A stretch of 64,000 nt of DNA, from the IMG/VR virus record IMGVR_UViG_3300037882_001770, positions 253,494 through 317,493 of that record; one strand, 5' to 3'. Both the position numbers and the translations under genes were made by a program. Numbering within the stretch: the first letter of the stretch is position 1; each line of letters begins with the position of its first letter. The notes under the pieces were generated by a model. That model saw nothing but the letters and a program-made list of their open reading frames with translations. It was not told where the DNA came from and did not search any database. Shown one piece after another: positions 31,127-61,154 of the stretch.

Positions 31127-32321
31127 ACTATTCTACATGGGCTTAGAGTCGTACGAGGCTCGGTATACACTACAACTGACTGAATGGAATCGCCGTGTGT
31201 TTGAACGGCGCGGCCTGGATGTGGTTTATGTTCCTGGCACTACTATCGATGACTCCCAAGCTATCTGCGTGGGTCAAGTGCTGGATGCACATGGTCGCAG
31301 TTACTTTGGCATGAGTCAGATGATGAACCTGGTTCAACTAATGCGAAATGGAGAAGTCACTAGTGAAGATGTTATCTACTTTGAAGACATGTTTCAACCC
31401 GGTATCGAGAGCTTGCCTTATATTATGGATCAAGTGCCTGTTACTCACCGTCCTCGTGTTTATGTACGTTGCCTTGCTCAGGCCATTGATCCAGATGACT
31501 TTGTTCATGTATGGGGTATGGCTAAATGGATGGACCTGTACGAAAAAATGGTTAACGAATTTGTCACAGGTGTATTAGCAACTAATGAAGAGATGGTGGC
31601 TCACATGCGTATTGCAGGGTGGACTGCTCCTATCTACAATATTTCAGGATTGGCGTTTGGCAAAGCAGAAGTTCTAGAGCGTATAGGTGGCTCGCAAAAT
31701 ATCAAACCCTTTGCAGAACGTAAACGTCGTGTCGGTTTTGCGGCACGTTGGGATCAAGAGAAGCAACCGGGTTTCTTCATGGACTTGATTGACATGTACG
31801 GTGAGTTAACTACGGAGCCGTGCGAGTTTGCTATATTCCAAGGCGGACCATTACGCAGTAACAATCCTGAATATGTAGAACGTGCCCGACGCATGGAGCG
31901 TGAAGGTAAACTTAAAATTTACGATAACTTAACTAAGAACGAATACTATGCTCTTGTCAACGACACTCGCGTATTGTTTAATTGTGCTTTACAGGACTGG
32001 GTGTCAAACACAGTCTCAGAAGCAGATACACTTGGAGCAAATGTTTTATATCCTGCTTATCGTAGCTTCCCTGAAACTTTTGCAGATGACCCAAACCGGC
32101 TTTATGTTCCTTGGTCAATAGATGATGCCTATCACAAAATGCAAAACTTGTTACGTGAACCACATCATAACATGGGCTTGATCAGTGATTGGACTGATGG
32201 AACTGTTGATCGCATTGTAGACATTTTAGAAGGCAAGGGCGAGCAATGGAATCGTGCAGGCAATCGCTATCGAGATCATGTAAGCCAGGCCAAATACCAT
32301 GTAAGGAAGATCGAATCATGA
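31119..32321 (+). CDS. GT-B glycosyltransferase
   Basis: FAARWDQEKQP and EA...GA...YP...SFPE C-terminal domain; start re-assigned to MRKLFY. Confidence 0.7.
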   Translation: MRKLFYMGLESYEARYTLQLTEWNRRVFERRGLDVVYVPGTTIDDSQAICVGQVLDAHGRSYFGMSQMMNLVQLMRNGEVTSEDVIYFEDMFQPGIESLPYIMDQVPVTHRPRVYVRCLAQAIDPDDFVHVWGMAKWMDLYEKMVNEFVTGVLATNEEMVAHMRIAGWTAPIYNISGLAFGKAEVLERIGGSQNIKPFAERKRRVGFAARWDQEKQPGFFMDLIDMYGELTTEPCEFAIFQGGPLRSNNPEYVERARRMEREGKLKIYDNLTKNEYYALVNDTRVLFNCALQDWVSNTVSEADTLGANVLYPAYRSFPETFADDPNRLYVPWSIDDAYHKMQNLLREPHHNMGLISDWTDGTVDRIVDILEGKGEQWNRAGNRYRDHVSQAKYHVRKIES

Positions 32322-33268
32322 AAGTTGTAGTTACTGGTGCGGCCGGGTACATTGGCGGAGAAACACTAATCAAGTTAGTCGATGCCGGACATGATGTACT
32401 GGCTATAGATCGTGTGATGCCACCAGGTAGTTTAATTTCGGTTCCTTGCCAATGGCACACTGGTGATTTTGCCAGTGAACTAGGAATAGACGCTATCAAG
32501 TTGTTTTGCCCTGATGCTATTATTCATTGTGCCGGTACTAGTTTGGTCGGACCAAGCCTAGAGCATCCAGAAGAATACTACAATAATAACTTTATTAAAA
32601 CTAAAATTCTATTAGACTATTTGGTCAAGAATCATGACAAACAAGTTAGATTTATTTTTAGTTCAAGTGCCGCAACCTACGGTAATCCCATCATGACTCC
32701 GGTTCAAGAAATTGATCCAACTGAGCCAATTAGTCCATACGGCCAAAGTAAGTTAATGATTGACTGGATGTTACAAAGTTATCAGCAAGCCTACGGATTA
32801 GACTTTGTGTCATTTCGTTACTTTAATGCTTGCGGTGCTGATAGTCAAGCCCGACACGGTCAGCCACCAGGAGCTACTCATATCATTGCTCGTGTGTTAG
32901 AATCAGTTAAAAATAACACTGACTTTACTTTGTATGGCACCGATTATCCCACTGATGATGGTACTTGTATTCGCGACTATATCCACGTGGAAGATCTAGC
33001 AGAAGCACACATTATTGCTATAGACCAAACCATCCCCAGCGGTGTTTATAATCTCGGTACTAATGCCGGTAACAGTAATCTTGCAGTTGTACAATTAGCT
33101 TCGCAGATAGTCAGCCGAGATATTCCGGTACTACACGGACCTCAACGAAAAGGTGATCCTGCTATCCTTACTGCTGATGCTAGCAAGTTTATGAGCGTGA
33201 GCTCTTGGGCTCCAAGATTTACGTTACATGATATTATTACCCACGCATGGGCCTGGTATAATAAATGA
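32318..33268 (+). CDS. galE: UDP-glucose 4-epimerase
   Basis: TGAAGYIG, FSSSAATYG, YGQSK, RYFNACG, DGTCIRDYIHVEDLA. Confidence 0.88.
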   Translation: MKVVVTGAAGYIGGETLIKLVDAGHDVLAIDRVMPPGSLISVPCQWHTGDFASELGIDAIKLFCPDAIIHCAGTSLVGPSLEHPEEYYNNNFIKTKILLDYLVKNHDKQVRFIFSSSAATYGNPIMTPVQEIDPTEPISPYGQSKLMIDWMLQSYQQAYGLDFVSFRYFNACGADSQARHGQPPGATHIIARVLESVKNNTDFTLYGTDYPTDDGTCIRDYIHVEDLAEAHIIAIDQTIPSGVYNLGTNAGNSNLAVVQLASQIVSRDIPVLHGPQRKGDPAILTADASKFMSVSSWAPRFTLHDIITHAWAWYNK

Positions 33269-33855
33269 GTTTCCAAGCATTATTTGATTTTGAATCTGCG
33301 CTAGCTGAATATACCGGCGCACCTTACGTAGTACTAACTGACGGTTGTACTCATGCTCTAGAACTTTGTTTTCGTTACGACAAAATCAAAGAAACTGCAT
33401 TTACACCATATACCTACTTGAGTGTCCCTATGCTTATGCATCACTTGGGGATCAAGTATGAATATCATAACCAAGAGCATAGACAAAAGTGGACAGGTGA
33501 ATACAAGTTCGAATGTACACGTATCTGGGACTCGGCTCGTAGACTAGAACGCAACATGTACCACCCAGGACAAATGCAGTGCCTGAGTTTTGGATGGACC
33601 AAACCTCTACAACTGGGCAAGGTAGGCGCCATCCTTCTTGACGACGCAGAAGCACATCGCGTCATGAGTCGGCAACGGTCAGATGGTAGAGATCTACATG
33701 TGCCATGGGAAACCGAAACCGAATTGATCTTGGGTTATCACTATTGCCCCACTTTGGAACTATGCGTAAAGGGATTAGAATTATTACCCGTTATAGAACC
33801 CCGGTCACAACCTGGCATTTATCCAGACTGTAGAAATATTTTGTTTACTACTTGA
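33265..33855 (+). CDS. Short DegT/DnrJ-family PLP aminotransferase-like protein
   Basis: FESALAEYTG, CTHALEL, DSA, LSFGWTKPL (PLP Lys); about half normal length. Confidence 0.65.
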   Translation: MSFQALFDFESALAEYTGAPYVVLTDGCTHALELCFRYDKIKETAFTPYTYLSVPMLMHHLGIKYEYHNQEHRQKWTGEYKFECTRIWDSARRLERNMYHPGQMQCLSFGWTKPLQLGKVGAILLDDAEAHRVMSRQRSDGRDLHVPWETETELILGYHYCPTLELCVKGLELLPVIEPRSQPGIYPDCRNILFTT

Positions 33856-33932: not shown

Positions 33933-34763
33933 ATGCCTAAATATGTTTCACCTGAAGAACAAAAGATAGAAGATTTAAAATCACGAAAATATGCAGACGA
34001 AGCGCCGTATCATCCTGGCTACGAAGATGCGGCCTTGGGACCAATCGCATTCGACGAAGACAAAGACTACAAGGAAGCTAATCTAGCCGATGCCATTAGA
34101 TTTAACATGCGGCGCGATAAGAAACGTTTTTGGGCCGGTGATAACATTAGTGATTATCTGCACGAAGGCGATAAAGAACGCCTTATCAATGAAGCTACGG
34201 TGGCTTTTGAAAAAGTGTTAGATACCTTGTTGATTGATCGTGAAACAGACCCTAACAGCCGAGGCACAGCACGTAGACTGGCCAAGATGTATTTTAACGA
34301 AATTATGGAGGGTAGATATGCGCCAGCCCCAGATGCAACAGCTTTTCCGAATGATTCAGAAGACCGCTATGAAGGTATGTTGGTTGTTCGTAGTGAGTTA
34401 CGAAGTATATGCAGTCATCACCATCAGCCTGTCAGTGGTGTTGCTTATATTGGCATCATCGCCGCCAACAAACTTATCGGTCTTTCTAAGTATACTCGGA
34501 TCGCTCAGTGGTGCGCTCGCCGTGGTACTCTACAAGAAGAATTATGTAACGACATTGCAAGAGAAATAATGCGAGCCACAGACTCAGAAAACGTGGGTGT
34601 GTATGTACAGGCCACGCATGGGTGTTGTGAAAATCGTGGTATTATGGCACATTCCAGTCTAACACAGACTACCGTGCTTCGAGGTTCGTTCCAAACAGAT
34701 CCCGGCACTAAAAAAGAGTTCATGGACAATATCAAACTACAACAGGACTTTGCGCCAAGATGA
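33933..34763 (+). CDS. folE: GTP cyclohydrolase I
   Basis: SICSHHHQP, GLSK, LQEEL, HGCCENRG motifs. Confidence 0.92.
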   Translation: MPKYVSPEEQKIEDLKSRKYADEAPYHPGYEDAALGPIAFDEDKDYKEANLADAIRFNMRRDKKRFWAGDNISDYLHEGDKERLINEATVAFEKVLDTLLIDRETDPNSRGTARRLAKMYFNEIMEGRYAPAPDATAFPNDSEDRYEGMLVVRSELRSICSHHHQPVSGVAYIGIIAANKLIGLSKYTRIAQWCARRGTLQEELCNDIAREIMRATDSENVGVYVQATHGCCENRGIMAHSSLTQTTVLRGSFQTDPGTKKEFMDNIKLQQDFAPR

Positions 34764-35414: not shown

Positions 35415-37925
35415 ATGAAGCGGAAATTGCTTTATACACTAATGTTCGGCTCAGTTATTGTGCTCACTGCCTGTGGGGGTGGAGGAGGGGGTGGAAGAGA
35501 GAGTGGAGGAGGAGGTGCTCCTGGTTCTCCACCGATCTATAATACTCCTAATCCATATCTCAGAGCCGAAGTCCCGTATTCTACCCCAGTGTTACAAGCA
35601 GTAGTAGATCCATTGGTCAACGTGGCAGGTAATGGCTATAAATGGGCAGTAGCCGACACATTCTCGGCAGACATTGTCGGCACCGGTGGTCAAGATTTAA
35701 TTGTTGCTGGTCGTATGACCCAACCGACTCCTATCGCAGAATGGGGCGACAATCGCATCAGCATGCTGAGCTGGCAAAACAATCAGCTGGTAGATAAAAC
35801 AACGCAATGGTTTCCAAATGATACCAATATTATATTAGGTACTGAGCCTAGTGTTAAATTTGCTGACTTTTTTAAAACAGGTCGCAATGACATGTTTGTA
35901 TCAACCGGTACTGATATGCAACACTACGGTCCAACATATTTTTATCGCAATACCGGCACACAGTTCGAACGTCAACTATTAACCACAGCAAATATTTGGT
36001 CGCATGATTCTGCAATCGGCGACCTTGACGGGGACGGGTACAAAGATATTGCTATTATTGACTACGGCACTAATACTACACTGGCCTTTAACAACCGAGT
36101 AAATGGATTTAATGTATATACTCAAGCTCAAAACATAGTTAACGGTTACACCAACGTAGCCATCCATACCGGCAGTAGTATTGCTATTGGTAATTTTTTA
36201 GGCAACAGCCAAGGACAACTGATAGTAACTGATACTCCCGGTGCCAACAACAGTAGTCCTACAAAAATGTATTCTTGGGCGATCAATGCTCAAAATCAAC
36301 TTAACTTTACAGAATTATCTACACTACCAACTCCTAGATTTGAACTGCCTAAATGGGCCGGGTATGGGTTTGCACCCGGAAGCCATAACGTTAGAGCAGT
36401 AACGTACGATTTCAATGATGACGCCAAGCCCGATGTATTGATTTTCAGTCGACCTGGGCTTGGTACTGTAGATAACAAATGGAGCGAAATACAGTTCTTA
36501 AAAAATAGCGGAACTGGTGCATTTACTGATGTAACCGATGATACTCTAGTAGGTTATAATCATAGAACCTACACTACATATAATCCTAAATTTCTTGACT
36601 TAAACGGTGACGGGCGCGAAGACATCTTAGTATCCGGTGCAGATTTTACAGGGACTAACAATAGCACACAATTTTTATTAAAAAGTTCAGACGGCAAGTA
36701 TGTGGCAGCATATCAAAACATTCTAACTGACTTTGCGACTCAGGCCAATTCAGTGCAAGGTGCCGACAACATGGGCAATACTGTAAATGTACTCAAAGCG
36801 CCCAATGGCAAACTATTTTTAGTTTCGGCAGTTAGTTTTATGAACAACGGCGATCGCCAACTTGCGGTGTACATGAGCGAACTTGGTAGTCAAAGTACTA
36901 CAACTGCTCAAACAGCAATTAACTTAATTTTACAAAAATGGCCGTACATGACTGTGCCGGAGGCCAACGAAGTGTTGGCGCGAACTAGTGCTACATATTT
37001 TGGCGGACGTGTAATTGATATAGATACTATGATGAATCCTGTTGGGTCATTAAGTATTCCTAACGCTAGAGGTTTGGCACCGATCAACGGATTTATTGCA
37101 GGAGTTAATTTAGATTCTGGACAAGCGGTTGTACTTGATGAGCTTAAACGATCATACAGTATGAATATTCAGCCCATGAACATCATGCGTTTAAATGCGT
37201 TTCAAATGAATATGGGACATAACGATCAACATAATCTTACTAGTCATGCTGAGTATCTGGTAAACGGACCTGTAATGACTTATGGTAACATTAGAGTCGG
37301 TAGCGAAAATCGAAACAACTTCACACACGGCGGTGCAAGCGACGGTCCAATGCTGGTTAATCAACAACTTACAAATTACACTCTTGGCCTTCCAAACATC
37401 TGGAGCAAAGGTAATTTTTCAGTTGGTACACAATATACTGTTCTTAATCAAAATCCGTGGCTTGCAATAGGCGGTGCTTGGGGCCAAATTACCAATTCAA
37501 ACGTGCTTGATAATGTAGTAACCTATCGTAATAAAGGATTTAGTACGCAGGCTAGTTTGATGCACGTGACCACAAATATCACTCCCGGACTAGTAACCAA
37601 TGTGAGCAACATGACTGGGGGATGGGCCGAAACCGGATATAGATATACTGACTGGAAAGGGCTTGGCGACATTGGCGTATATGCTGGTGTCAAACCGGTT
37701 GTGTTTTCGGGCAATGTTACAGCAAGAATTCCAACCAGTATTGACAACGCAGGCAACATAGTGTACACTAATAAAAACATGGCCATACAAAATCAAACCA
37801 CTACATATATCCGTGCTATGTACAGCAACATGCTAGACAAAAATACACAGTATCGAGTTAGTGGCATGGTGTTGTCAAGTGGTCAATATCGACTCATGTA
37901 TGAACTTAGATGGTGGTTAGACTAA
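35415..37925 (+). CDS. FG-GAP/VCBS-repeat lipoprotein with C-terminal beta-strand-rich domain
   Basis: LTA-C-GGGG lipobox; GDLDGDGYKD, DFNDDAKPD, DLNGDGRED repeats; aromatic amphipathic C-terminus. Confidence 0.75.
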   Translation: MKRKLLYTLMFGSVIVLTACGGGGGGGRESGGGGAPGSPPIYNTPNPYLRAEVPYSTPVLQAVVDPLVNVAGNGYKWAVADTFSADIVGTGGQDLIVAGRMTQPTPIAEWGDNRISMLSWQNNQLVDKTTQWFPNDTNIILGTEPSVKFADFFKTGRNDMFVSTGTDMQHYGPTYFYRNTGTQFERQLLTTANIWSHDSAIGDLDGDGYKDIAIIDYGTNTTLAFNNRVNGFNVYTQAQNIVNGYTNVAIHTGSSIAIGNFLGNSQGQLIVTDTPGANNSSPTKMYSWAINAQNQLNFTELSTLPTPRFELPKWAGYGFAPGSHNVRAVTYDFNDDAKPDVLIFSRPGLGTVDNKWSEIQFLKNSGTGAFTDVTDDTLVGYNHRTYTTYNPKFLDLNGDGREDILVSGADFTGTNNSTQFLLKSSDGKYVAAYQNILTDFATQANSVQGADNMGNTVNVLKAPNGKLFLVSAVSFMNNGDRQLAVYMSELGSQSTTTAQTAINLILQKWPYMTVPEANEVLARTSATYFGGRVIDIDTMMNPVGSLSIPNARGLAPINGFIAGVNLDSGQAVVLDELKRSYSMNIQPMNIMRLNAFQMNMGHNDQHNLTSHAEYLVNGPVMTYGNIRVGSENRNNFTHGGASDGPMLVNQQLTNYTLGLPNIWSKGNFSVGTQYTVLNQNPWLAIGGAWGQITNSNVLDNVVTYRNKGFSTQASLMHVTTNITPGLVTNVSNMTGGWAETGYRYTDWKGLGDIGVYAGVKPVVFSGNVTARIPTSIDNAGNIVYTNKNMAIQNQTTTYIRAMYSNMLDKNTQYRVSGMVLSSGQYRLMYELRWWLD

Positions 37926-38296
37926 TGGACTTAGAAGAAGCTCAACGATACGGAATAGCACCTTGGGACAACATACTCAAAGAAGACTTTCACGTGGTAG
38001 TGTATCTAGATCGATATCCTTGTACTGAAGGACATAGACTATATGTTCCTAGATACGACTCGGATATGTTGATGAATCAGTGCCTCACTGACGCTCTAAG
38101 AGATGGCCAGGCTATGGTTGCCGCAGGTGAGTGTGACGGATTCAACATTGGTATGAATTGGGGTACAGCCGCGGGGCAAACTGTGATGTGGCCACACATT
38201 CATCTTATACCAAGAAGAAATGGTGATGTTGAAGATCCAGTGGGCGGAGTTAGAAATACCATACCCGGTAAAGGTAATTATAAAAAATGGAAGTAG
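37925..38296 (+). CDS. HIT family hydrolase
   Basis: AGQTVMWPHIHLIPR histidine-triad region (first His replaced by Trp). Confidence 0.8.
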   Translation: MDLEEAQRYGIAPWDNILKEDFHVVVYLDRYPCTEGHRLYVPRYDSDMLMNQCLTDALRDGQAMVAAGECDGFNIGMNWGTAAGQTVMWPHIHLIPRRNGDVEDPVGGVRNTIPGKGNYKKWK

Positions 38297-38490
38297 CACT
38301 TACCGCGTTAATGGTAGGATTGTTGGGATACCAAGTAACCATGCCGTCAAATGAAAATGCCAAATACATGTTTAGTGTGCATCAGGATACCATTATAAAA
38401 ATGAACACCCAAGACGGCAGTATGGTAAAATGCAAATCAGATTTGACTTGTGAAGAATTTAAAACTGTATCCACTGAAACAAATAAATAG
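38287..38490 (+). CDS. Small membrane-anchored hypothetical protein
   Basis: 67-aa ORF with hydrophobic N-terminus. Confidence 0.45.
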   Translation: MEVALTALMVGLLGYQVTMPSNENAKYMFSVHQDTIIKMNTQDGSMVKCKSDLTCEEFKTVSTETNK

Positions 38491-38496
38491 ATTTAC

Positions 38497-38562
38497 AGCG
38501 GCCTTTTGGTGTCACCCCGCTTTACAAATTCTGCCACCTATGCTATAATCTAACATAGGAGA
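38497..38562 (+). promoter_or_regulatory. Candidate cis-regulatory RNA in queD leader
   Basis: AGCGG/CCGCT stem, loop TGGTG pairing with TGCCA, then CCTATG/CATAGG stem covering the SD. Confidence 0.5.
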
Positions 38563-38568
38563 AATACA

Positions 38569-39093
38569 ATGGCAAAATATCTTTCAACAAAAACTTATGG
38601 TAACGATCGCGGCTTGTCCTGCTGTTTCAGACAATGGCGCAGTACACACAGCCATTGCAGTTTGCTACATGGTTACTCAATTGGTATTAAACTGATCTTT
38701 GAAAGTGAAACTCTAGATGATCGTAACTGGGTCATGGACTTTGGCGGACTCAAAGCGTTCAAAGAATGGGCTGATTGGCAATTTGATCATACCATGTGTG
38801 TGGGGTCTGATGATCCCCATTTAGAAAAATTCAAAGCCCTAGCCGCACTAGGCAAACAGGCCGAAGGCGGCATAGTAGATCTGCGTATTGTAGAAGCGGT
38901 GGGCTGTGAAAAATTTGCAGAACTTGCTTATCGCACAATGCAACAAATATTAGCGGCATATCAAGAAGGTAGCAAGTGGCATCATCCTGACGGACGTGTA
39001 TTTGAAGCACGTTACCCAGTTGAGATCGGTGTTAGACTGCGCTCAGCAGAAGTATTCGAACATGCCGGTAATAGTGCTATCTATGAAGGCTAA
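38569..39093 (+). CDS. queD: 6-carboxytetrahydropterin synthase
   Basis: HCSLLHGYS, WVMDFGGLK, FDH, GCEKFAE, VFEH motifs. Confidence 0.85.
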   Translation: MAKYLSTKTYGNDRGLSCCFRQWRSTHSHCSLLHGYSIGIKLIFESETLDDRNWVMDFGGLKAFKEWADWQFDHTMCVGSDDPHLEKFKALAALGKQAEGGIVDLRIVEAVGCEKFAELAYRTMQQILAAYQEGSKWHHPDGRVFEARYPVEIGVRLRSAEVFEHAGNSAIYEG

Positions 39094-39122: not shown

Positions 39123-40016
39123 ATGACAAGACCGTTTAAAATTGCAGTATTGTTACCCACTCGTGGAAGGACTGATGCCTTGGCTCGTAGTATCATTAGC
39201 CTGTTTAATCGAGCTGTGGACAAAAGCAGCATTCAGTTGATGATGATTTTTGATCACGACGACGATATAGGGTATGGATACTTTGAAAGAAAAATTCGGC
39301 CTTGGCTGGACGATCACGAAATCGACTATACTGCACTCGGAGTCGACAGCATGGGGTATGAGGGTCTTAATCGTTATTACAACACTATGGCAGAATCATG
39401 TGATGCTGATTGGTTTTTTATCTGGAACGATGATGCTATCATGGAAACTACTGGCTGGGATCAAATAATTACCAAAAACACAGGCGAATTTAAGCTGTTG
39501 GCTGTACGCACACACAACGATCATCCTTACAGTATTTTTCCTATTATTCCTCGTGAGTGGTACGATCTATTTGGCTTGTTGAGCCGTCATCAGATGATCG
39601 ACGCAGAGTTTAGTCAGCTTGCATACATGCTCAATATATTTGAACGAGTAGATATTTTTGTTACCCACGACCGTGCAGACCTCACCGGCAACAATGCCGA
39701 CGAAACTGACAAAAAACGTGTGAGATTCGAGGGCAATCCAGAAAATCCGCATGACTTTCATCACACTCTCTACTCTAAGCAACGTCTTGTTGACGCAGAA
39801 ACCATAGCACAATATATGAAGTCAATTGGCATGGACGTAGAATTTTGGACCAATGTCAAGGCTGGCAAACAGTATCCATGGGAACAACTGATCAAAAATG
39901 ACACTAACAAACAGATGAGACAATTTGGCGTAACAGTAGATCCTGTCACAAACAAAGTGGTTGCTATCAAACCAGACGATCATGCAAACATAGTAAGGCA
40001 ACAAAATGAATCTTGA
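39123..40016 (+). CDS. GT-A glycosyltransferase
   Basis: LLPTRGR, DHDD, WNDDA motifs. Confidence 0.7.
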   Translation: MTRPFKIAVLLPTRGRTDALARSIISLFNRAVDKSSIQLMMIFDHDDDIGYGYFERKIRPWLDDHEIDYTALGVDSMGYEGLNRYYNTMAESCDADWFFIWNDDAIMETTGWDQIITKNTGEFKLLAVRTHNDHPYSIFPIIPREWYDLFGLLSRHQMIDAEFSQLAYMLNIFERVDIFVTHDRADLTGNNADETDKKRVRFEGNPENPHDFHHTLYSKQRLVDAETIAQYMKSIGMDVEFWTNVKAGKQYPWEQLIKNDTNKQMRQFGVTVDPVTNKVVAIKPDDHANIVRQQNES

Positions 40017-41241
40017 TATCATTACCAGTAAAAAAATTGATCAGTGCTTGATTACCAGTTTGCCAGTTACTAAAGTTTTAGATTTTGGTCAGCATTCTTA
40101 TGCTGATACTTTTATTAGCCAAGATCAATATCATCTCAGCGAGCCAGTGTTTCCTTTACAGGTCATGCTGTGTCCAGATTCAGGCATGATACAGTTAGGA
40201 TATGTCAGCAACGCCGAAGCAAGATATAATTTATACAGCTACAGTTACACTTCCAGTAATAGCAAAACTGCAAGAGATCATTGGGATCGTTATGCCGCCA
40301 CTATTAAAAATACCTACGGGGTCAACGGACTAGTTGTTGAGATTGGCAGCAATGACGGATATCTAATTGGACAGTTTAATGGCGAAGCTACCACAGCACT
40401 TGGAGTTGACAGTAGCAAAGAAATGTGTCGTCTTGCCAAGAACAAAGGAGTCGAAACAGTACACGGATTATTTGATTTCGGTACTGCCCAGTCTCTAAAA
40501 AACACACATGGCACAGCAAAAATTATTATGGCCAATAATGTGTTTAATCATGCCAACGACCCGCTGGCATTTGCCAAAGCAGTTGGCGAATTGTTAGACC
40601 CAGAGTCAGGTGTATTTGTATTCGAAGTGCCATACTGGCTCAGTATGGTCCAAAGTGGCCGCTTTACAGATATGGTCTATCACGAACATCCTAGCTATTT
40701 TACAGTAAAGAGTCTTTGGAATTTGCTTAAAATTGCAGGGCTAGAAATTACAGATTATCAAATAGTAGACTACCATGGCGGAAGTCTGAGAGTACATGCT
40801 CGTTGTGATACTGGTGCAGACATGCCAGACTTGATTACCCATGCAATACTTCAAGAACACGTAGCTGGAATATTCCTGCCAGAGTTTTATCAAAATCTTC
40901 AAAGAAAATTTGAATTGCAACGAGCTGAATGGTTGTATAATTTTAATCAGATTTACATGACCGATCCCGATGCTGTGTTTATTGGCATTGGTGCAGCCGC
41001 AAAAGCAAACACCTGGCTAACCTGGCACGGCCTCAATGCTACCCACTTGCATTGTATTACCGACGCTAGCGAATACAAGCAAGGCAAATACACCCCGCTG
41101 AGTAGAATTCCTATTTTAGGCGACAACGAGTTTGCCAATCATCCGGCTCCGTATGCGTTGATTTTAAGTTGGAATATTAGCGAAGGCCTCAAGAAATCCA
41201 TACTAAATATCAACCCCAACACAAGGTTTATTTCACAATGA
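40006..41241 (+). CDS. NDP-sugar C-methyltransferase
   Basis: EIGSNDG, NVFNH, YHEH, HGGSLR, GAAAKANT, KQGKYTP motifs. Confidence 0.85.
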   Translation: MNLDIITSKKIDQCLITSLPVTKVLDFGQHSYADTFISQDQYHLSEPVFPLQVMLCPDSGMIQLGYVSNAEARYNLYSYSYTSSNSKTARDHWDRYAATIKNTYGVNGLVVEIGSNDGYLIGQFNGEATTALGVDSSKEMCRLAKNKGVETVHGLFDFGTAQSLKNTHGTAKIIMANNVFNHANDPLAFAKAVGELLDPESGVFVFEVPYWLSMVQSGRFTDMVYHEHPSYFTVKSLWNLLKIAGLEITDYQIVDYHGGSLRVHARCDTGADMPDLITHAILQEHVAGIFLPEFYQNLQRKFELQRAEWLYNFNQIYMTDPDAVFIGIGAAAKANTWLTWHGLNATHLHCITDASEYKQGKYTPLSRIPILGDNEFANHPAPYALILSWNISEGLKKSILNINPNTRFISQ

Positions 41242-41645
41242 AACACTACAATATTCACAGCAACCAAGAGCCTGGTCTAGGTGTACATCAAGACGATCGC
41301 GGTACCATTGCAGATATTTTTTATAAATTAAATGTAAATCACGGTTGTTTAATCAGCAATGCTCCCGGAGCAGTGCGTGGCAATCATTATCACAAATTAA
41401 CAACACAGTACACCTTTATTGTAGCCGGCAGTTTGGAATACTATAGCAAATCTGTCGACAGTGACAAGCCAGCTCAAGTGCTATCAGCAAAGGGCGGGGA
41501 TTTTATTATTAGCGAACCAAACGAGATCCATGCACTCCGCGCTGGCGCACAAGGGTGTGTGTTTATAGCATTTGCTGAAGGCCCTCGTGGTGGTGAAGAC
41601 TACGAAAATGACACATTTCGAGTAGACTCAATTATTCCACAATGA
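41238..41645 (+). CDS. Cupin (NDP-sugar isomerase/epimerase-like)
   Basis: DDRG, VRGNHYH, PNEIH. Confidence 0.7.
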   Translation: MKHYNIHSNQEPGLGVHQDDRGTIADIFYKLNVNHGCLISNAPGAVRGNHYHKLTTQYTFIVAGSLEYYSKSVDSDKPAQVLSAKGGDFIISEPNEIHALRAGAQGCVFIAFAEGPRGGEDYENDTFRVDSIIPQ

Positions 41646-42235
41646 AAAAAACTGTAGCGATTTTTGGAGCAAGTGGCGGCATTGGACGAGCTGTTAGGCA
41701 AGCCTTCCTGGATGCCGAATACACAGTTATTCCGGTCAGTCGTACCTTGATTGATTTTGCCGGTACTGATGCTGAACGTCAAATACAAGAATTTTTAAGT
41801 TTATCCACACCGGATGTAGTGGTCAACTGCGTTGGAAAGTTTAGCAACAATGACGAGCCAGCCGGCCCACTCATGAACATAAACTTCAACAGCAATTGGG
41901 CAATAGTTCAACACTATTTAAAAAATCCACAGCCGGTTAGGGTTATTATTGTTGGGTCAAGTGCATACAAATCTGGCAGAAAAGATTACATGGTGTACAG
42001 CGCCAGCAAGGCTGCCCTATACAACCTATGGCAAGGTGCAAGAGATACGTTTGCTGAAACCGAAGTACGAGTCGACTTAGTTAATCCTGTAAGAACTCGT
42101 ACCAAAATGGTTGAACCATTTAACACAGAACTAGATTATCTGGAGCCACAAGAAGTTGCAAAATGTATTTTACAATTGGATCAATGGAACGATCCCAGCA
42201 GATGCGTAGACATAACTTTTAAGGATGCAAAATGA
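41642..42235 (+). CDS. SDR oxidoreductase
   Basis: GASGGIG and YSASK. Confidence 0.8.
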   Translation: MKKTVAIFGASGGIGRAVRQAFLDAEYTVIPVSRTLIDFAGTDAERQIQEFLSLSTPDVVVNCVGKFSNNDEPAGPLMNINFNSNWAIVQHYLKNPQPVRVIIVGSSAYKSGRKDYMVYSASKAALYNLWQGARDTFAETEVRVDLVNPVRTRTKMVEPFNTELDYLEPQEVAKCILQLDQWNDPSRCVDITFKDAK

Positions 42236-43005
42236 AAATAGGATTATTAGGACGCGGTACTGTAGGCAAAGCTGTCTATGAAGGGCTGGAATATCTAGGC
42301 CACGAAATGAGTTTCTTTGACCCAGCCTACGAAGGCTCACACATTGAGGACGTGCTGTCAACTGACTGTGTGTTTATTTGTGTACCGACTGATCAGGCAG
42401 CCAACGGCGACTGTGATACCAGTATTGTAGACCGTGTGGTCAAAGATCTTGCTGAACGCAATTATACTGGATTGGTATCTATTAAAAGCACAGTAGTTCC
42501 TGGGACCACCGAGCGTCTACAAAAAACCTACCCTGAGTTAAGATTAAGCATGGTTCCAGAATTTTTACGTGCTAAAAGTGCATTGGCTGATTTTGTATAC
42601 AATCATGACCTATTAGTTGTGGGCTGTAACAACAAAGAGGATGCGGAACTTCTAGTAGAAATCCACGGAAGTTTTCCTGAAAACATTGCTCGTGTAAGTC
42701 CTACTGAAGCCGAAGTGATCAAATATTTTAACAACGTACATCATGCTATGAGTGTGACCTTTGCCAACATCACATATGATGTATGCGACAAGCTAGGCGC
42801 CAACTATATGAATGTGTACAAGGCCATTACCAAACGTGAATGCATCAATCCTCATTACCTAATGGCCAATCCGAACATGCGAGGATACGGCGGGCATTGT
42901 TTGCCAAAAGATACCAGCGCATGGAACAACTTGATTCAAAATTTAGGATTAGACTTTGGATTAATTCAAGCAGTAATCAACGACAACGAGAAATTTAACA
43001 AATGA
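42232..43005 (+). CDS. UDP-glucose/GDP-mannose dehydrogenase family (short form)
   Basis: GRGTVG, CVPT, IKSTVVPGT, PEFL, GYGGHCLPKD; lacks C-terminal domain. Confidence 0.85.
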   Translation: MKIGLLGRGTVGKAVYEGLEYLGHEMSFFDPAYEGSHIEDVLSTDCVFICVPTDQAANGDCDTSIVDRVVKDLAERNYTGLVSIKSTVVPGTTERLQKTYPELRLSMVPEFLRAKSALADFVYNHDLLVVGCNNKEDAELLVEIHGSFPENIARVSPTEAEVIKYFNNVHHAMSVTFANITYDVCDKLGANYMNVYKAITKRECINPHYLMANPNMRGYGGHCLPKDTSAWNNLIQNLGLDFGLIQAVINDNEKFNK

Positions 43006-43913
43006 AAATACTAGTAACCGGTGCCAGCGGCTTGTTGGGCACAGAAATCTGCCGCCAACTCAAACAAAACAAAAAAAATGTAGTATGGGCCATGGACAAT
43101 CATTCCAGAAGCGAAAGCATTCCGCCCTGTGATAAGTTTATCGAAGTAGACCTAACCGCTGGCGATGTCGCGTATGCAGAGTTACCTATAGACTTTGATT
43201 ATATCTATCACTATGGTGCAATCAACGGTACTAAAAACTTTTACGAACGCCCAAATCAAGTATTATGGAACAACATGATTGGCGACTTCAATGTTTTTGA
43301 GTTTGCAGGCATGAATAAAAAACTAAAGAAACTAGTGTATGCTTCTAGTAGTGAAGTAGTCAGCGATGATCCAAAAAGCCCTGTACCAGAAAATACAAAT
43401 ATCACAATCAACAATATTCACAACGCTAGATGGAGTTATAGACTGCCAAAGATATGTGCCGAGAATTACCTGGCCAACAGCAATTTGCCATATGTCATGA
43501 TTCGATATTTTAATGTGTACGGTGACAACAGCAAAGCAGGGCATTTTTTAGCAGACCAAATTGAGAAAATTCAAAACGGTGTATTCGAAATTATCGGGCC
43601 CAAAGAAACTCGTAGTTTTTGTCACGTGGAAGACGCAGTAAGGGCTACAATTTTCTGCGCAGAGAACGCAAATCGCGAACTGTTTAACATTGGCAATGAT
43701 CGAGAAATCACTATCAAAGATGCTGCCCAAATTATTGCAGCTGAACTTGGACATGCTTCGCCTAAATGGAAAACCACTCCAGGTAAAGCCGGTAGTACAC
43801 CAAACCGCAGACCAAACATCAACAAGCTCAAAAAGCTCATGAAGGATTACAAGCCCATGACATTTGAACAAGGCATCAAACAAATCATTGCCAATCGCGT
43901 TGACAAAAAGTAA
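43002..43913 (+). CDS. NAD-dependent sugar epimerase/dehydratase
   Basis: TGASGLLG, ASSSEV, YRLPK, RYFNVYG, TRSFCHVED. Confidence 0.85.
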   Translation: MKILVTGASGLLGTEICRQLKQNKKNVVWAMDNHSRSESIPPCDKFIEVDLTAGDVAYAELPIDFDYIYHYGAINGTKNFYERPNQVLWNNMIGDFNVFEFAGMNKKLKKLVYASSSEVVSDDPKSPVPENTNITINNIHNARWSYRLPKICAENYLANSNLPYVMIRYFNVYGDNSKAGHFLADQIEKIQNGVFEIIGPKETRSFCHVEDAVRATIFCAENANRELFNIGNDREITIKDAAQIIAAELGHASPKWKTTPGKAGSTPNRRPNINKLKKLMKDYKPMTFEQGIKQIIANRVDKK

Positions 43914-43934: not shown

Positions 43935-44468
43935 ATGAAAAAAATATATTATACCTGGCAAGATGTTGAGAAACAAACCCAAGAAATTCTACGCCAACTT
44001 CAGCGCGATGCATGGATGCCCGACTATGTAGTAGGACTCACTCGTGGTGGACTAGTACCAGCTAATTTGATTAGTCAATACCTCGAGGTTCCAATGGAAA
44101 CACTTAAGGTTAGTTTGCGTGATGATAACTCGCAACCAGAAAGTAATTTATGGATGGCCGAAGATGCTTACGGGTATACCATCCATGATCCTATGTGTAA
44201 CGGTGATGGCCGTAAGAATATTCTTATTGTAGACGATATCAATGATTCGGGTGCTACACTTAACTGGATCAAACAAGACTGGATGAGCAGTTGCATGCCA
44301 GTTGACAGCCGTTGGGATCATGTATGGAGCAATAATGTTCGTGTAGCTGTGCTAGTGGATAACGAAGCAAGCACCAGTGAATTAAATGTTAGTTATTCAG
44401 CTGTCGACCTAAATAAGGCTGAAGAAGATTCGTGGATTGTTTTTCCTTGGGAAGATTGGTGGAAATAA
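43935..44468 (+). CDS. Purine phosphoribosyltransferase (Gpt-like)
   Basis: GLTRGGLVPA, LIVDDINDSGATL PRPP motif, WIVFPWE. Confidence 0.85.
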   Translation: MKKIYYTWQDVEKQTQEILRQLQRDAWMPDYVVGLTRGGLVPANLISQYLEVPMETLKVSLRDDNSQPESNLWMAEDAYGYTIHDPMCNGDGRKNILIVDDINDSGATLNWIKQDWMSSCMPVDSRWDHVWSNNVRVAVLVDNEASTSELNVSYSAVDLNKAEEDSWIVFPWEDWWK

Positions 44469-60673: not shown

Positions 60674-60748
60674 CTTAGTTTTGCATTTTGATCAAAATGC
60701 ATGGTGGGTCGGACTGTTAGAATGTAGTAGTAAAGAATTGTTGTAATT

Positions 60749-61095
60749 CCTTCGTAGTGAAGGCGTTGTGGACCCGGGTTCGATTCCCGGCAGGTCCACC
60801 ATAAGGAGATTGACATGGATCAAGAAGCTGTATTAGTAGTCGCATTTCTACTGATAGGACTATTGTTTGTCTTTTTATGATGGGCCTGACATGGTCTCGA
60901 CATGGCGAGATAGCGAAAGAGGCAACACAGTAGGCGATGACTGTAAATCAAGCAAATTATGTAAATGCAAAAACATCTACAGGCGAAACTACTGTATCAG
61001 GTAAGAACATCAAGTTCTCTGCTCGTACAGCACAACGCCAATCATTAGCAGTTTAATCACTGCTTAGGGTAATTATACCTCGTAACAGAAAATAG
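60749..61095 (+). ncRNA. ssrA: Permuted (two-piece) tmRNA; outer ends approximate
   Basis: T-arm CCGGG-TTCGATT-CCCGG and CAGGTCC-A-CCA (ends 60801) precede 5' strand GGGCCTG (60882); 7-bp acceptor stem with G3:U70; CATGGCG/CGTTGTG helix; tag frame 60967-61056 starts GCA and ends LAV-stop. Confidence 0.88.
60815..60880 (+). CDS. 21-aa hydrophobic peptide ORF in tmRNA intervening segment
   Basis: TAAGGAG SD; MDQEAVLVVAFLLIGLLFVFL. Confidence 0.45.
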   Translation: MDQEAVLVVAFLLIGLLFVFL

Positions 61096-61096
61096 T

Positions 61097-61123
61097 AGAA
61101 CCCGCTTCGGCGGGTTTCTTTTT
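61097..61123 (+). terminator. Intrinsic terminator after tmRNA
   Basis: AACCCGC-TTCG-GCGGGTT plus T-tract. Confidence 0.85.
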
Positions 61124-61154
61124 GGCAAATTAAAATATCATGGTAAGTAAACGC

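What the first reader, a model, noticed from the sequence alone, without database searches (positions are those of the whole stretch)
38484..38571. Pseudoknot plus SD-sequestering hairpin in the queD leader
Seen: after TAAATA, stem AGCGG/CCGCT; its loop (TGGTG) can pair with downstream TGCCA after an A-rich linker (H-type pseudoknot); directly adjacent CCTATG/CATAGG hairpin covers part of AGGAG. Established: que genes are often under small pseudoknot preQ1 riboswitches, but this sequence does not match the consensus I recall. Inference: a variant riboswitch for a pathway metabolite.
Basis: partly seen in the sequence, partly recalled or inferred. Interest (0 to 1): 0.6.

Follow-up and report, generated by a model that had tools for sequence, protein, structure and literature searches.

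The report
Phage queD leader pseudoknot riboswitch candidate
The leader of a jumbo phage's queD-like gene holds a small, strongly conserved RNA pseudoknot, found in front of the same gene in hundreds of uncultured aquatic phages and matching no catalogued RNA family; it looks like a new metabolite-sensing switch that turns translation on.

Summary
Window 38497-38538 folds as an H-type pseudoknot. P1 is AGCGG/CCGCT.

Three alignments (44, 72 and 84 distinct sequences) show strong covariation: 85-90% of cells paired, score about 0.45 against 0.13-0.14 when shuffled, 0 of 500 shuffles as high.

The element lies in front of QueD/PTPS-family genes that share as little as 33% identity, once per phage record, and nowhere else. 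The only convincing copies in the bacterial collection lie on short MAG contigs next to the same phage gene.

No Rfam 15 family matches, including preQ1-I, -II and -III. It shares topology and several pocket-like features with preQ1-I but fails other defining ones.

Four different expression platforms follow one rule: the 3' strand of P2 can instead pair with the Shine-Dalgarno or start-codon region. I therefore read it as a ligand-activated (ON) translational switch. The ligand is unknown; I guess a guanine-faced pterin or 7-deazapurine.

These phages carry FolE and QueD but no QueC or DpdA. The window's version also embeds a near-consensus sigma-70 promoter and follows a T4-late-like TAAATA motif.

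The parts
38484..38489 (+). TAAATA, a T4-late-like phage promoter motif 7 nt upstream of P1. It overlaps the TAG stop (38488-38490) of the upstream 67-aa ORF.
   Evidence: ATAAATA is the most enriched 7-mer within 80 nt upstream of genes in the 317-kb genome: 26 seen against 1.7 expected. 30 of 43 window-type leaders have TAAATA or TAAGTA 2-14 nt before P1. PMC9004378 cites TATAAAT as the T4-like late promoter. That it works as a promoter is inferred.
38497..38501 (+). P1 5' strand, AGCGG
   Evidence: Pairs with 38517-38521. 98.6-100% of cells are paired. The middle pair is C-G, A-U or U-A (30/29/25 in A3). Compensatory changes also occur at pairs 1 and 2.
38502..38507 (+). L1: variable first base, then conserved C-U, then a spacer of variable length
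   Evidence: Column frequencies and alignments A1-A3.
38508..38514 (+). P2 5' strand: GGTG (P2b), invariant U38512 (mismatch), CA (P2a)
   Evidence: All P2b pairs change on both sides across the alignments. P2a pairs are 99% conserved, each with one compensatory variant (U-A in L037; G-C in L286 and L306) and never unpaired.
38515..38516 (+). L2, two bases. C38516 is the 99%-conserved cytosine directly 5' of the P1 3' strand and is the candidate ligand-pairing base.
   Evidence: The position is analogous to the preQ1-I specificity cytosine described in PMC11625349. The ligand-pairing role is inferred.
38517..38521 (+). P1 3' strand, CCGCT
38522..38531 (+). L3, 10 nt: three invariant A at alternate positions, ending in invariant U-C
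   Evidence: It is shorter in the variants with a 4-bp P1 (L302 and L297).
38532..38538 (+). P2 3' strand: TG (P2a), invariant C38534, CACC (P2b)
   Evidence: These same bases take part in the alternative sequestering structure.
38537..38559 (+). Shine-Dalgarno-sequestering hairpin, CCTATG / loop / CATAGG. Its first two C are also the last two bases of P2.
   Evidence: A compensatory variant CCTATA/TATAGG occurs in L168.
38570..38574 (+). TGGCA of the start-codon region, which can pair with TGCCA 38532-38536 and closes the sequestering structure
   Evidence: It appears in the MFE fold. P1 plus sequestor scores -15.0 kcal/mol, against -4.6 for P1 alone.
38521..38549 (+). Embedded sigma-70-like promoter: -35 TTTACA inside P1 3'/L3, 17-nt spacer, TG-extended -10 TATAAT in the hairpin loop
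   Evidence: 11 of 12 matches. 39 of 43 window-type leaders carry such a promoter, 38 with the TG, and at most one has an upstream sigma-70 promoter. Function is inferred.
38557..38561 (+). Shine-Dalgarno sequence AGGAG
38569..39093 (+). QueD-like (PTPS-family) gene, 174 aa, the regulated gene
   Evidence: Pfam PTPS 1.6e-12. PHROG 2389 'QueD-like' 6.5e-32. 46% identical to the QueD of Pseudomonas phage Iggy, which sits in a QueE-QueC-QueD-FolE-DpdA cluster.
33933..34763 (+). GTP cyclohydrolase I (FolE), which supplies the QueD substrate. It is not under the motif.
   Evidence: FolE was found in 19 of 26 related records, in several of them lying just upstream of the aptamer on the same strand.

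Best explanation
Window 38497-38538 encodes the aptamer of a previously uncatalogued, phage-borne riboswitch candidate. It is a 43-50 nt H-type pseudoknot: a 5-bp P1, a P2 of 2 pairs + U.C mismatch + 4-7 pairs, a 2-nt L2 ending in an invariant C, and a 10-nt L3 with alternating invariant A.

It sits in the 5' leader of a QueD-like gene. QueD makes 6-carboxytetrahydropterin from the FolE product dihydroneopterin triphosphate.

Proposed mechanism:
- Without ligand, the P2 3' strand pairs with the translation initiation region. In the window, TGCCA pairs with the TGGCA of the start region, and CCTATG pairs with CATAGG, which covers the Shine-Dalgarno sequence. Translation is off.
- With ligand, the pseudoknot is locked. 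The P2 3' strand is withdrawn, the Shine-Dalgarno and AUG are freed, and translation is on.

The ligand is unknown. My best guess is a bicyclic heterocycle with a guanine-like face from the GTP / pterin / 7-deazaguanine / folate network. That would gate the dihydroneopterin-triphosphate branch point.

In the window-type version, an embedded sigma-70 promoter would also give an aptamer-less, unregulated mRNA. The regulated mRNA would start at the TAAATA phage promoter just upstream.

Shown: the structure, its conservation, its gene association and the complementarity that allows strand exchange. Inferred: ligand binding, the ON logic, the ligand class and the use of both promoters.
For: Structure:
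- P1 and P2 covary in three alignments. A1 has 44 sequences found through the protein. A2 has 72 found through a DNA pattern that did not include the P1 5' strand or either P2 strand. A3 has 84, including distant protein subfamilies.
- 85-90% of cells are paired. Covariation scores are 0.43-0.47 against 0.13-0.14 when shuffled (0 of 500 as high) and at most 0.13 in slid registers.

Conservation:
- About 24 positions are at least 97% conserved, including unpaired ones. The downstream proteins diverge to 33% identity.

Gene association:
- 75 of the 80 pattern hits kept in viral contigs had a QueD/PTPS gene called downstream; the other 5 were truncated contigs or mis-called ORFs.
- There is exactly one model hit per record in 27 phage records, about 4.7 Mb in all, and one per locus in 85 loci.
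- In L017 the element precedes a canonical HGH-type QueD. In L071 it precedes a methyltransferase-QueD pair.

5'-leader position:
- Sigma-70-like promoters end 6-9 nt before P1 in classes b and c. TAAATA or TAAGTA lies 2-14 nt before P1 in class a.

Switching:
- Four different platforms all place the P2 3' strand in an alternative helix with the Shine-Dalgarno or AUG region. This holds in 145 of 162 leaders, against 56% and 39% in two shuffle controls.
- Complementarity to 'G of AUG plus 4 nt' is register-specific: mean 3.5 of 5 pairs, against at most 2.6 in other registers. It tracks changes in the second codon (GCA, ACU or ACA).

Energies in the window: sequestered state -15.0 kcal/mol, P1 alone -4.6, P2 duplex about -4.6.

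No Rfam family matches.
Against: - No binding or expression data exist. No RNA sequencing run holds the locus.
- The shuffle controls for the alternative pairing are themselves high (39-56%), and many leaders are related, so the ON logic rests mainly on its recurrence across four platform types.
- An ON switch on a biosynthetic gene is less common than feedback repression.
- One outlier (L304) shows a different local hairpin.
- In the window type, the internal promoter could bypass the switch.
- Pseudoknots in phage leaders can bind proteins, as in T4 gene 32 (my own knowledge).
Confidence: 0.58

Rival explanations
1. It is a diverged preQ1-I riboswitch that binds preQ1 or preQ0 and represses queD, the classical feedback OFF switch.
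For: It shares the H-type topology, the 5-bp P1 with an invariant G-C top pair, and an invariant C directly before the P1 3' strand, preceded by U, C or A. It has an A-containing L3 and is linked to a que gene. The preQ1-I features come from PMC11625349.
Against: - The RF00522 model does not find any copy, even at E <= 10. Permissive Rfam scans of 54-76 nt give nothing.
- There is no U directly after the P1 5' strand. L3 ends in U-C rather than A.
- P2 is 7-10 layers with an invariant U.C.
- The Shine-Dalgarno sequence is not in P2. The P2 3' strand competes with the sequestering helix instead.
- The phages lack QueC and TGT/DpdA.
- Cultured phages with complete pathways lack the element.
Confidence: 0.15
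2. It is a pseudoknot that binds a protein or the ribosome, and no small molecule is sensed. Examples would be autogenous translational control by QueD or another phage factor, or a constitutive enhancer.
For: Phage leaders with regulatory pseudoknots that bind proteins are known, for example T4 gene 32 (my own knowledge). The strict one-gene association would also fit autoregulation.
Against: The RNA is far more conserved than the protein it precedes, which falls to 33% identity and has two different active-site types, HGY and HGH. That argues for an invariant partner. Invariant unpaired bases cluster at the helix junction, and the platforms vary. Both are typical of aptamers.
Confidence: 0.2
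3. There are only DNA signals here: a weak terminator-like hairpin of the upstream ORF followed by a strong sigma-70 promoter. The RNA pseudoknot is fortuitous.
For: The promoter matches 11 of 12 positions with an extended -10. P1 is followed by TTT. The single-sequence fold is not significant.
Against: A promoter cannot explain covariation in both helices. The same aptamer occurs in about 120 leaders that have no internal promoter.
Confidence: 0.01

Closest known systems
preQ1-I riboswitch (Rfam RF00522, types I-III)
   Same: A small H-type pseudoknot in the leader of queuosine-pathway genes. Shared features are the 5-bp P1 with a conserved G-C top pair, a conserved cytosine immediately 5' of the P1 3' strand, a short L2, and an adenine-bearing L3 long enough to run along P1.
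   Different: - It is not detected by the family model.
- L1 lacks the U next to P1 and has N-C-U instead.
- L3 has alternating A and ends in U-C.
- P2 is much longer and holds an invariant U.C mismatch.
- The Shine-Dalgarno sequence lies outside P2.
- The platform logic appears inverted (ON).
- It is found only in uncultured phages that lack QueC and DpdA.
THF-I and THF-II (folE motif) riboswitches
   Same: They are cis-regulators at the GTP-cyclohydrolase/pterin node and bind a pterin ring with a guanine-like face (my own knowledge). That is a plausible ligand class here.
   Different: The folds are different (THF-II is a hairpin with an internal loop; THF-I is a three-way junction with a pseudoknot), and there is no model match. 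Here the regulated gene is QueD. FolE is not regulated by the motif.
Translational ON riboswitches, such as the Vibrio vulnificus add adenine riboswitch
   Same: An aptamer strand pairs alternately with the ribosome-binding region, and ligand binding frees the Shine-Dalgarno and AUG (my own knowledge).
   Different: The aptamer fold is unrelated. Here one strand of a pseudoknot is exchanged, not a three-way-junction helix.
SAM-II and SAM-V pseudoknot riboswitches
   Same: H-type pseudoknots with a loop-helix triplex that control translation.
   Different: No sequence or model match. In those families the Shine-Dalgarno sequence lies inside the pseudoknot, and they are OFF switches.
T4 gene 32 leader pseudoknot
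   Same: A pseudoknot at the 5' end of a phage mRNA that controls its translation.
   Different: That one binds a protein, gp32 (my own knowledge). The element here is conserved independently of the divergence of its protein.

Membership tests
preQ1-I riboswitch (RF00522) | Scores at or above the family covariance model's gathering threshold (39 bits) | tested here: not met
   No hit at the element at E <= 10 in the own genome or in 5 related records. Nothing in Rfam scans of the window, 301 nt and 54 nt, or of a marine copy. The control genomes respond, so the search works.
preQ1-I riboswitch (RF00522) | H-type pseudoknot: P1 hairpin whose loop pairs with the 3' tail (P2) | tested here: met
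   Covariation in both helices.
preQ1-I riboswitch (RF00522) | Strictly conserved 'specificity' cytosine directly before the P1 3' strand, preceded by A or U (PMC11625349) | tested here: met
   C in 99%, preceded by U 71%, C 18%, A 11%. Only the sequence feature was tested, not its role.
preQ1-I riboswitch (RF00522) | Conserved G-C closing pair of P1 that forms the pocket floor | tested here: met
   The top two P1 pairs are G-C in 100% of sequences.
preQ1-I riboswitch (RF00522) | Conserved U (or UU) in L1 directly after the P1 5' strand | tested here: not met
   The first L1 base is A 42%, U 23%, C 22%. The conserved C-U follows one base later.
preQ1-I riboswitch (RF00522) | A-rich L3 whose last adenine reads the ligand | tested here: inconclusive
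   L3 has three invariant A at alternate positions but ends in invariant U-C. The 3D role cannot be tested.
preQ1-I riboswitch (RF00522) | Shine-Dalgarno (or terminator) element built into P2, so that ligand turns expression OFF | tested here: not met
   The start codon lies 22-40 nt after the aptamer, so the Shine-Dalgarno sequence lies outside P2. The P2 3' strand is complementary to the start region or the Shine-Dalgarno hairpin.
preQ1-I riboswitch (RF00522) | Binds preQ1 | not testable with these tools
   Needs in-line probing or ITC.
Riboswitch (general) | Conserved, covarying aptamer in the 5' leader of a metabolic gene, joined to variable expression platforms | tested here: met
   Four platform types were found. 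Promoter-like motifs end 2-14 nt before P1.
Riboswitch (general) | Direct, selective binding of a small molecule that changes expression | not testable with these tools
   No RNA data are available.
Sigma-70 promoter (embedded, window type) | -35 and -10 hexamers at 16-18 nt spacing, with an extended -10 TG | tested here: met
   11 of 12 matches plus TG at 38521-38549. Conserved in 39 of 43 class-a leaders. Activity was not tested.

The most novel reading that the evidence does not exclude
This is a new riboswitch class known only from bacteriophages. It would be an ON-type pseudoknot aptamer that senses a pterin, folate or 7-deazapurine-like metabolite. It would let aquatic jumbo phages and marine phages gate the dihydroneopterin-triphosphate branch point by switching QueD translation on. 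In one lineage it would be combined with a nested host-type promoter, so that early unregulated and late regulated mRNAs come from the same leader.
Probability: 0.4. Interest if true: 0.85.

Novelty: new variant of a known kind. Interest (0 to 1): 0.78.

Why it matters
- Riboswitches are rare in phages (PMC9004378), and those reported there are copies of bacterial classes. This element has so far been found only on phage contigs, there in hundreds of them.
- It would add a new small aptamer of about 45 nt next to preQ1-I. That would be useful for understanding how H-type pseudoknots recognise ligands, and as a compact ON-type genetic part.
- It would give a handle on an open question: why do many phages carry only FolE and QueD, without the rest of the 7-deazaguanine pathway? 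The ligand would say what the phage is measuring.
- The nested arrangement of promoter and aptamer is an unusual piece of regulatory architecture.

Tried and rejected
- Rfam scans. Gathering threshold on the whole window, then E-value scans of 301, 54 and 76 nt. Only noise came back: mgtC leader, snoRNAs, DUF805 on the wrong strand.
- RF00522 on the own genome and five related records. Only scattered weak hits elsewhere.
- Single-sequence folding. z = -1.0, uninformative.
- Pattern scan of 596 Gb of bacterial and archaeal genomes. It gave 67 hits, about the number I would expect by chance (rough own estimate). Only 6 are true full-length copies, all on short MAG contigs with the phage QueD gene. 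The Photobacterium and Calothrix hits are false.
- blastn of two leaders against 50,697 GenBank phages: no match.
- Model search of the QueD regions of Iggy, Motura, BCSR5 and BUCT-ZZ01: nothing.
- Search for a QueE gene. The genome has 13 radical-SAM hits. The only QueE-sized one (210 aa) was scanned further and gives weak, non-specific matches.
- RNA evidence. No RNA run holds the locus, only small shares in freshwater DNA metagenomes.
- RNAalifold on class-c platforms. It recovered only the four pairs between the P2 3' strand and GGCA, with no compensatory change, because the start region is constrained by coding.
- Eight literature searches found no description of the motif.
- Not used: the large protein searches, protein structure prediction and complex prediction (none was needed); any alternative genetic code.

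Full report
**Setting.** The window is the last 64 kb of a 317,493-bp IMG/VR virus record. It is a jumbo phage at 89% estimated completeness. The finding lies between a 67-aa ORF (38287-38490) and a 174-aa ORF (38569-39093). The larger ORF belongs to the PTPS/QueD family: Pfam PTPS 1.6e-12 and PHROG 2389 'QueD-like' 6.5e-32. It is 46% identical to the QueD of Pseudomonas phage Iggy, which sits in a QueE-QueC-QueD-FolE-DpdA cluster. The window phage has a FolE gene at 33933-34763. It has no QueC, no TGT/DpdA and no convincing QueE.

**Checking the observation.** Rfam finds no preQ1 or other family there, at the gathering threshold or at E <= 10. Folding the window sequence alone is not significant (z = -1.0). 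A promoter scan shows a near-consensus sigma-70 promoter at 38521-38549 that overlaps the supposed leader: TTTACA, 17 nt, TG-extended TATAAT, 11 of 12 matches. At that point 'promoter only' was a serious rival.

**Comparative evidence.** I retrieved 80 viral loci through the protein and printed their upstream regions. Most carry the same element. In alignment A1 (44 distinct aptamers) I tested a structure of P1 plus a pseudoknot helix P2.
- P1 is 100% paired. Its middle pair is C-G, A-U or U-A, and its first pair is A-U or U-A.
- All seven P2 pairs change on both sides.
- The covariation score is 0.467 against 0.144 when shuffled (0 of 500 as high), and at most 0.134 in slid registers.

A DNA pattern drawn only from the L2 / P1-3' / L3 core found at least 120 further viral stretches. 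The 85 model hits on those loci and on five MAG contigs from the genome scan (one per locus in 790 kb) reproduce the covariation, although the P1 5' strand and both P2 strands were not part of the pattern (A2). A third set adds distant protein subfamilies. It gives the same result (A3) and new compensatory events:
- ACCGG/CCGGT in L017.
- Variants with a 4-bp P1 and a correspondingly shorter L3.
- Two further pairs beyond an invariant U.C mismatch. C-G becomes U-A in L037, and A-U becomes G-C in L286 and L306. Neither pair is ever unpaired.

The resulting architecture is P1 (5 bp), L1 (N-C-U plus spacer), P2b (4-7 bp), U.C, P2a (2 bp), L2 (2 nt ending in a 99% conserved C), and L3 (10 nt with A at alternate positions, ending in U-C). 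About 24 positions are at least 97% conserved. In the window:
- P1 is 38497-38501 with 38517-38521.
- P2b is 38508-38511 with 38535-38538.
- P2a is 38513-38514 with 38532-38533.

**Distribution and gene association.**
- 75 of the 80 pattern hits kept had a QueD/PTPS gene called downstream, at 33-88% identity to the window's, with the start codon 22-40 nt after the aptamer. The other 5 were truncated contigs or mis-called ORFs.
- In L017 the first gene is a canonical HGH-type QueD, followed by the HGY type.
- In L071 a CmoB-like methyltransferase lies between the aptamer and QueD.
- The own genome and 26 related records (63-382 kb) each hold exactly one copy.
- In 596 Gb of bacterial and archaeal genomes, the only full-length copies among the pattern's matches are six on short MAG contigs with the same phage gene.
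- FolE is present in 19 of the 26 related records, in several of them just upstream of the aptamer on the same strand. There is no full-length QueC and no TGT.
- Cultured phages with a complete 7-deazaguanine pathway (Iggy, Motura, BUCT-ZZ01) and Burkholderia phage BCSR5 lack the element.
- Eight literature searches found no description of it.

**Transcription context.** In classes b and c, a sigma-70-like promoter ends 6-9 nt before P1, so the mRNA would begin at the aptamer. The window-type class a has no such promoter. Instead, 30 of 43 class-a leaders have TAAATA or TAAGTA 2-14 nt before P1. In the own genome, ATAAATA is the most enriched 7-mer upstream of genes (26 against 1.7 expected), usually 20-35 nt before a start codon. 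It resembles the T4-type late promoter TATAAAT cited in PMC9004378. Class a also nearly always carries the embedded sigma-70 promoter (39 of 43, 38 with TG). Its -35 uses the class-specific C in L3, and its -10 lies in the hairpin loop. I infer two mRNAs: an aptamer-less one made by host RNA polymerase and a regulated one from the phage-type promoter.

**Mechanism.** The platforms differ, but in each the P2 3' strand overlaps the 5' strand of a helix that buries the Shine-Dalgarno sequence or the AUG.
- Class a: the CCTATG/CATAGG hairpin plus TGCCA/TGGCA.
- Class b: a long linker ending at AGAGATGGCA.
- Class c: CATTG.../...CAATGGCA.
- Marine class d: GTCATC/GATGAC.

The statistics are as follows.
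- In 145 of 162 distinct leaders, the pseudoknot-free MFE fold pairs at least 3 bases of that strand with the initiation region. Two shuffle controls give 56% and 39%.
- The P2b 3' core is complementary to 'G of AUG plus 4 nt' only in that register: mean 3.5 of 5 pairs, against at most 2.6 in other registers.
- The P2 5' strand mimics the start region as the second codon changes.
- In the window, the sequestered state scores -15.0 kcal/mol against -4.6 for P1 alone, and P2 as a duplex is worth about -4.6.

So P2 needs extra stabilisation to win. This is the design of a ligand-activated (ON) translational switch. It is inferred and has not been shown.

**Comparison with preQ1-I.** I used the defining features reviewed in PMC11625349.
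- Shared: the H-type fold, the 5-bp P1 with a G-C top pair, the conserved C before the P1 3' strand, and an adenine-bearing L3.
- Not shared: detection by the family model, a U next to P1 in L1, a terminal A in L3, a short P2 that contains the Shine-Dalgarno sequence, and OFF logic.

I therefore do not file it as a preQ1-I member. It may be a distant structural cousin.

**Ligand.** It is unknown. The invariant C at the junction suggests a guanine-like face. The gene set (FolE and QueD only), the placement between FolE and QueD, and the ON logic fit sensing of a substrate-side or folate-side pterin at least as well as preQ1 or preQ0.

**Rivals.**
- A preQ1-binding OFF switch: 0.15.
- A protein- or ribosome-binding pseudoknot: 0.2. 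The RNA is far more conserved than its protein, which weakens this one.
- DNA signals only: about 0.01, refuted by the compensatory changes.

**Housekeeping.** No alternative genetic code was used. The large protein searches were not needed.

Noticed in passing
window 60687-61147 (+): A phage-encoded permuted (two-piece) tmRNA of the betaproteobacterial type: Rfam tmRNA_permuted 118 bits and beta_tmRNA 112 bits. ARAGORN reads a tag peptide ending ...RQSLAV. It hints at a betaproteobacterial host.
   Followed up: no
whole genome G000; examples at window 7817, 26638, 33864, 38484: TAAATA, especially ATAAATA, is about 15-fold enriched within 80 nt upstream of genes, usually 20-35 nt before the start codon. 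It is probably the phage's own T4-late-like promoter. Achromobacter phage Motura also has TAAATA before its queD.
   Followed up: partly
window 38521-38549: A near-consensus, TG-extended sigma-70 promoter is nested inside the riboswitch candidate, with the -35 in L3 and the -10 in the hairpin loop. It is conserved in 39 of 43 class-a leaders, which lack an upstream sigma-70 promoter.
   Followed up: yes
window 38569-39093 and relatives: The QueD-like proteins behind the motif have HGY where solved QueD/PTPS structures have HGH (alignments), and an N-terminal C-x-[FY]-R-Q motif. One zinc-binding histidine may therefore be replaced. The enzymatic product is unverified.
   Followed up: partly
L298, L299, L300 (three metagenomes), about 1435-1482: In this variant the otherwise 99% conserved junction C is a U. 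That U could pair with the A that follows P1 and extend P1 by one pair. This may mean altered specificity or a collapsed pocket.
   Followed up: no
L017 2496-3001; L071 2206-3001; L077: Other gene arrangements occur behind the aptamer: a canonical HGH-type QueD followed by the HGY type; a CmoB-like (Methyltransf_9) methyltransferase followed by QueD; and a QueD with an N-terminal extension.
   Followed up: partly
window 37910-38296; L139 1906-2337: A HIT-family gene lies one or a few genes upstream of queD both in the freshwater jumbo phage and in a marine contig. This may be a conserved neighbourhood.
   Followed up: no
genome G000, outside the window (for example C1:18288-30316): The genome has 13 radical-SAM domain hits, 10 of them above the Pfam cut-off, mostly in open frames of 300-480 aa and several clustered at 18-30 kb. 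That is an unusually large set for a phage.
   Followed up: no
window 32246-33855 and 39123-43913: Sugar-nucleotide modification genes flank the locus: epimerases/dehydratases, a DegT-type aminotransferase fragment, a C-methyltransferase, a cupin, an SDR, a UDP-glucose dehydrogenase-like gene and a glycosyltransferase-like gene. A phosphoribosyltransferase lies at 43935-44468.
   Followed up: no
window 35415-37925 (+): An 836-aa protein with FG-GAP repeats, a lipoprotein-like N-terminus and a glycine-rich linker lies between folE and queD.
   Followed up: no
window 33933-34763: FolE carries an N-terminal extension of about 90 aa before the GTP cyclohydrolase I domain, which spans residues 93-267.
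   Followed up: no
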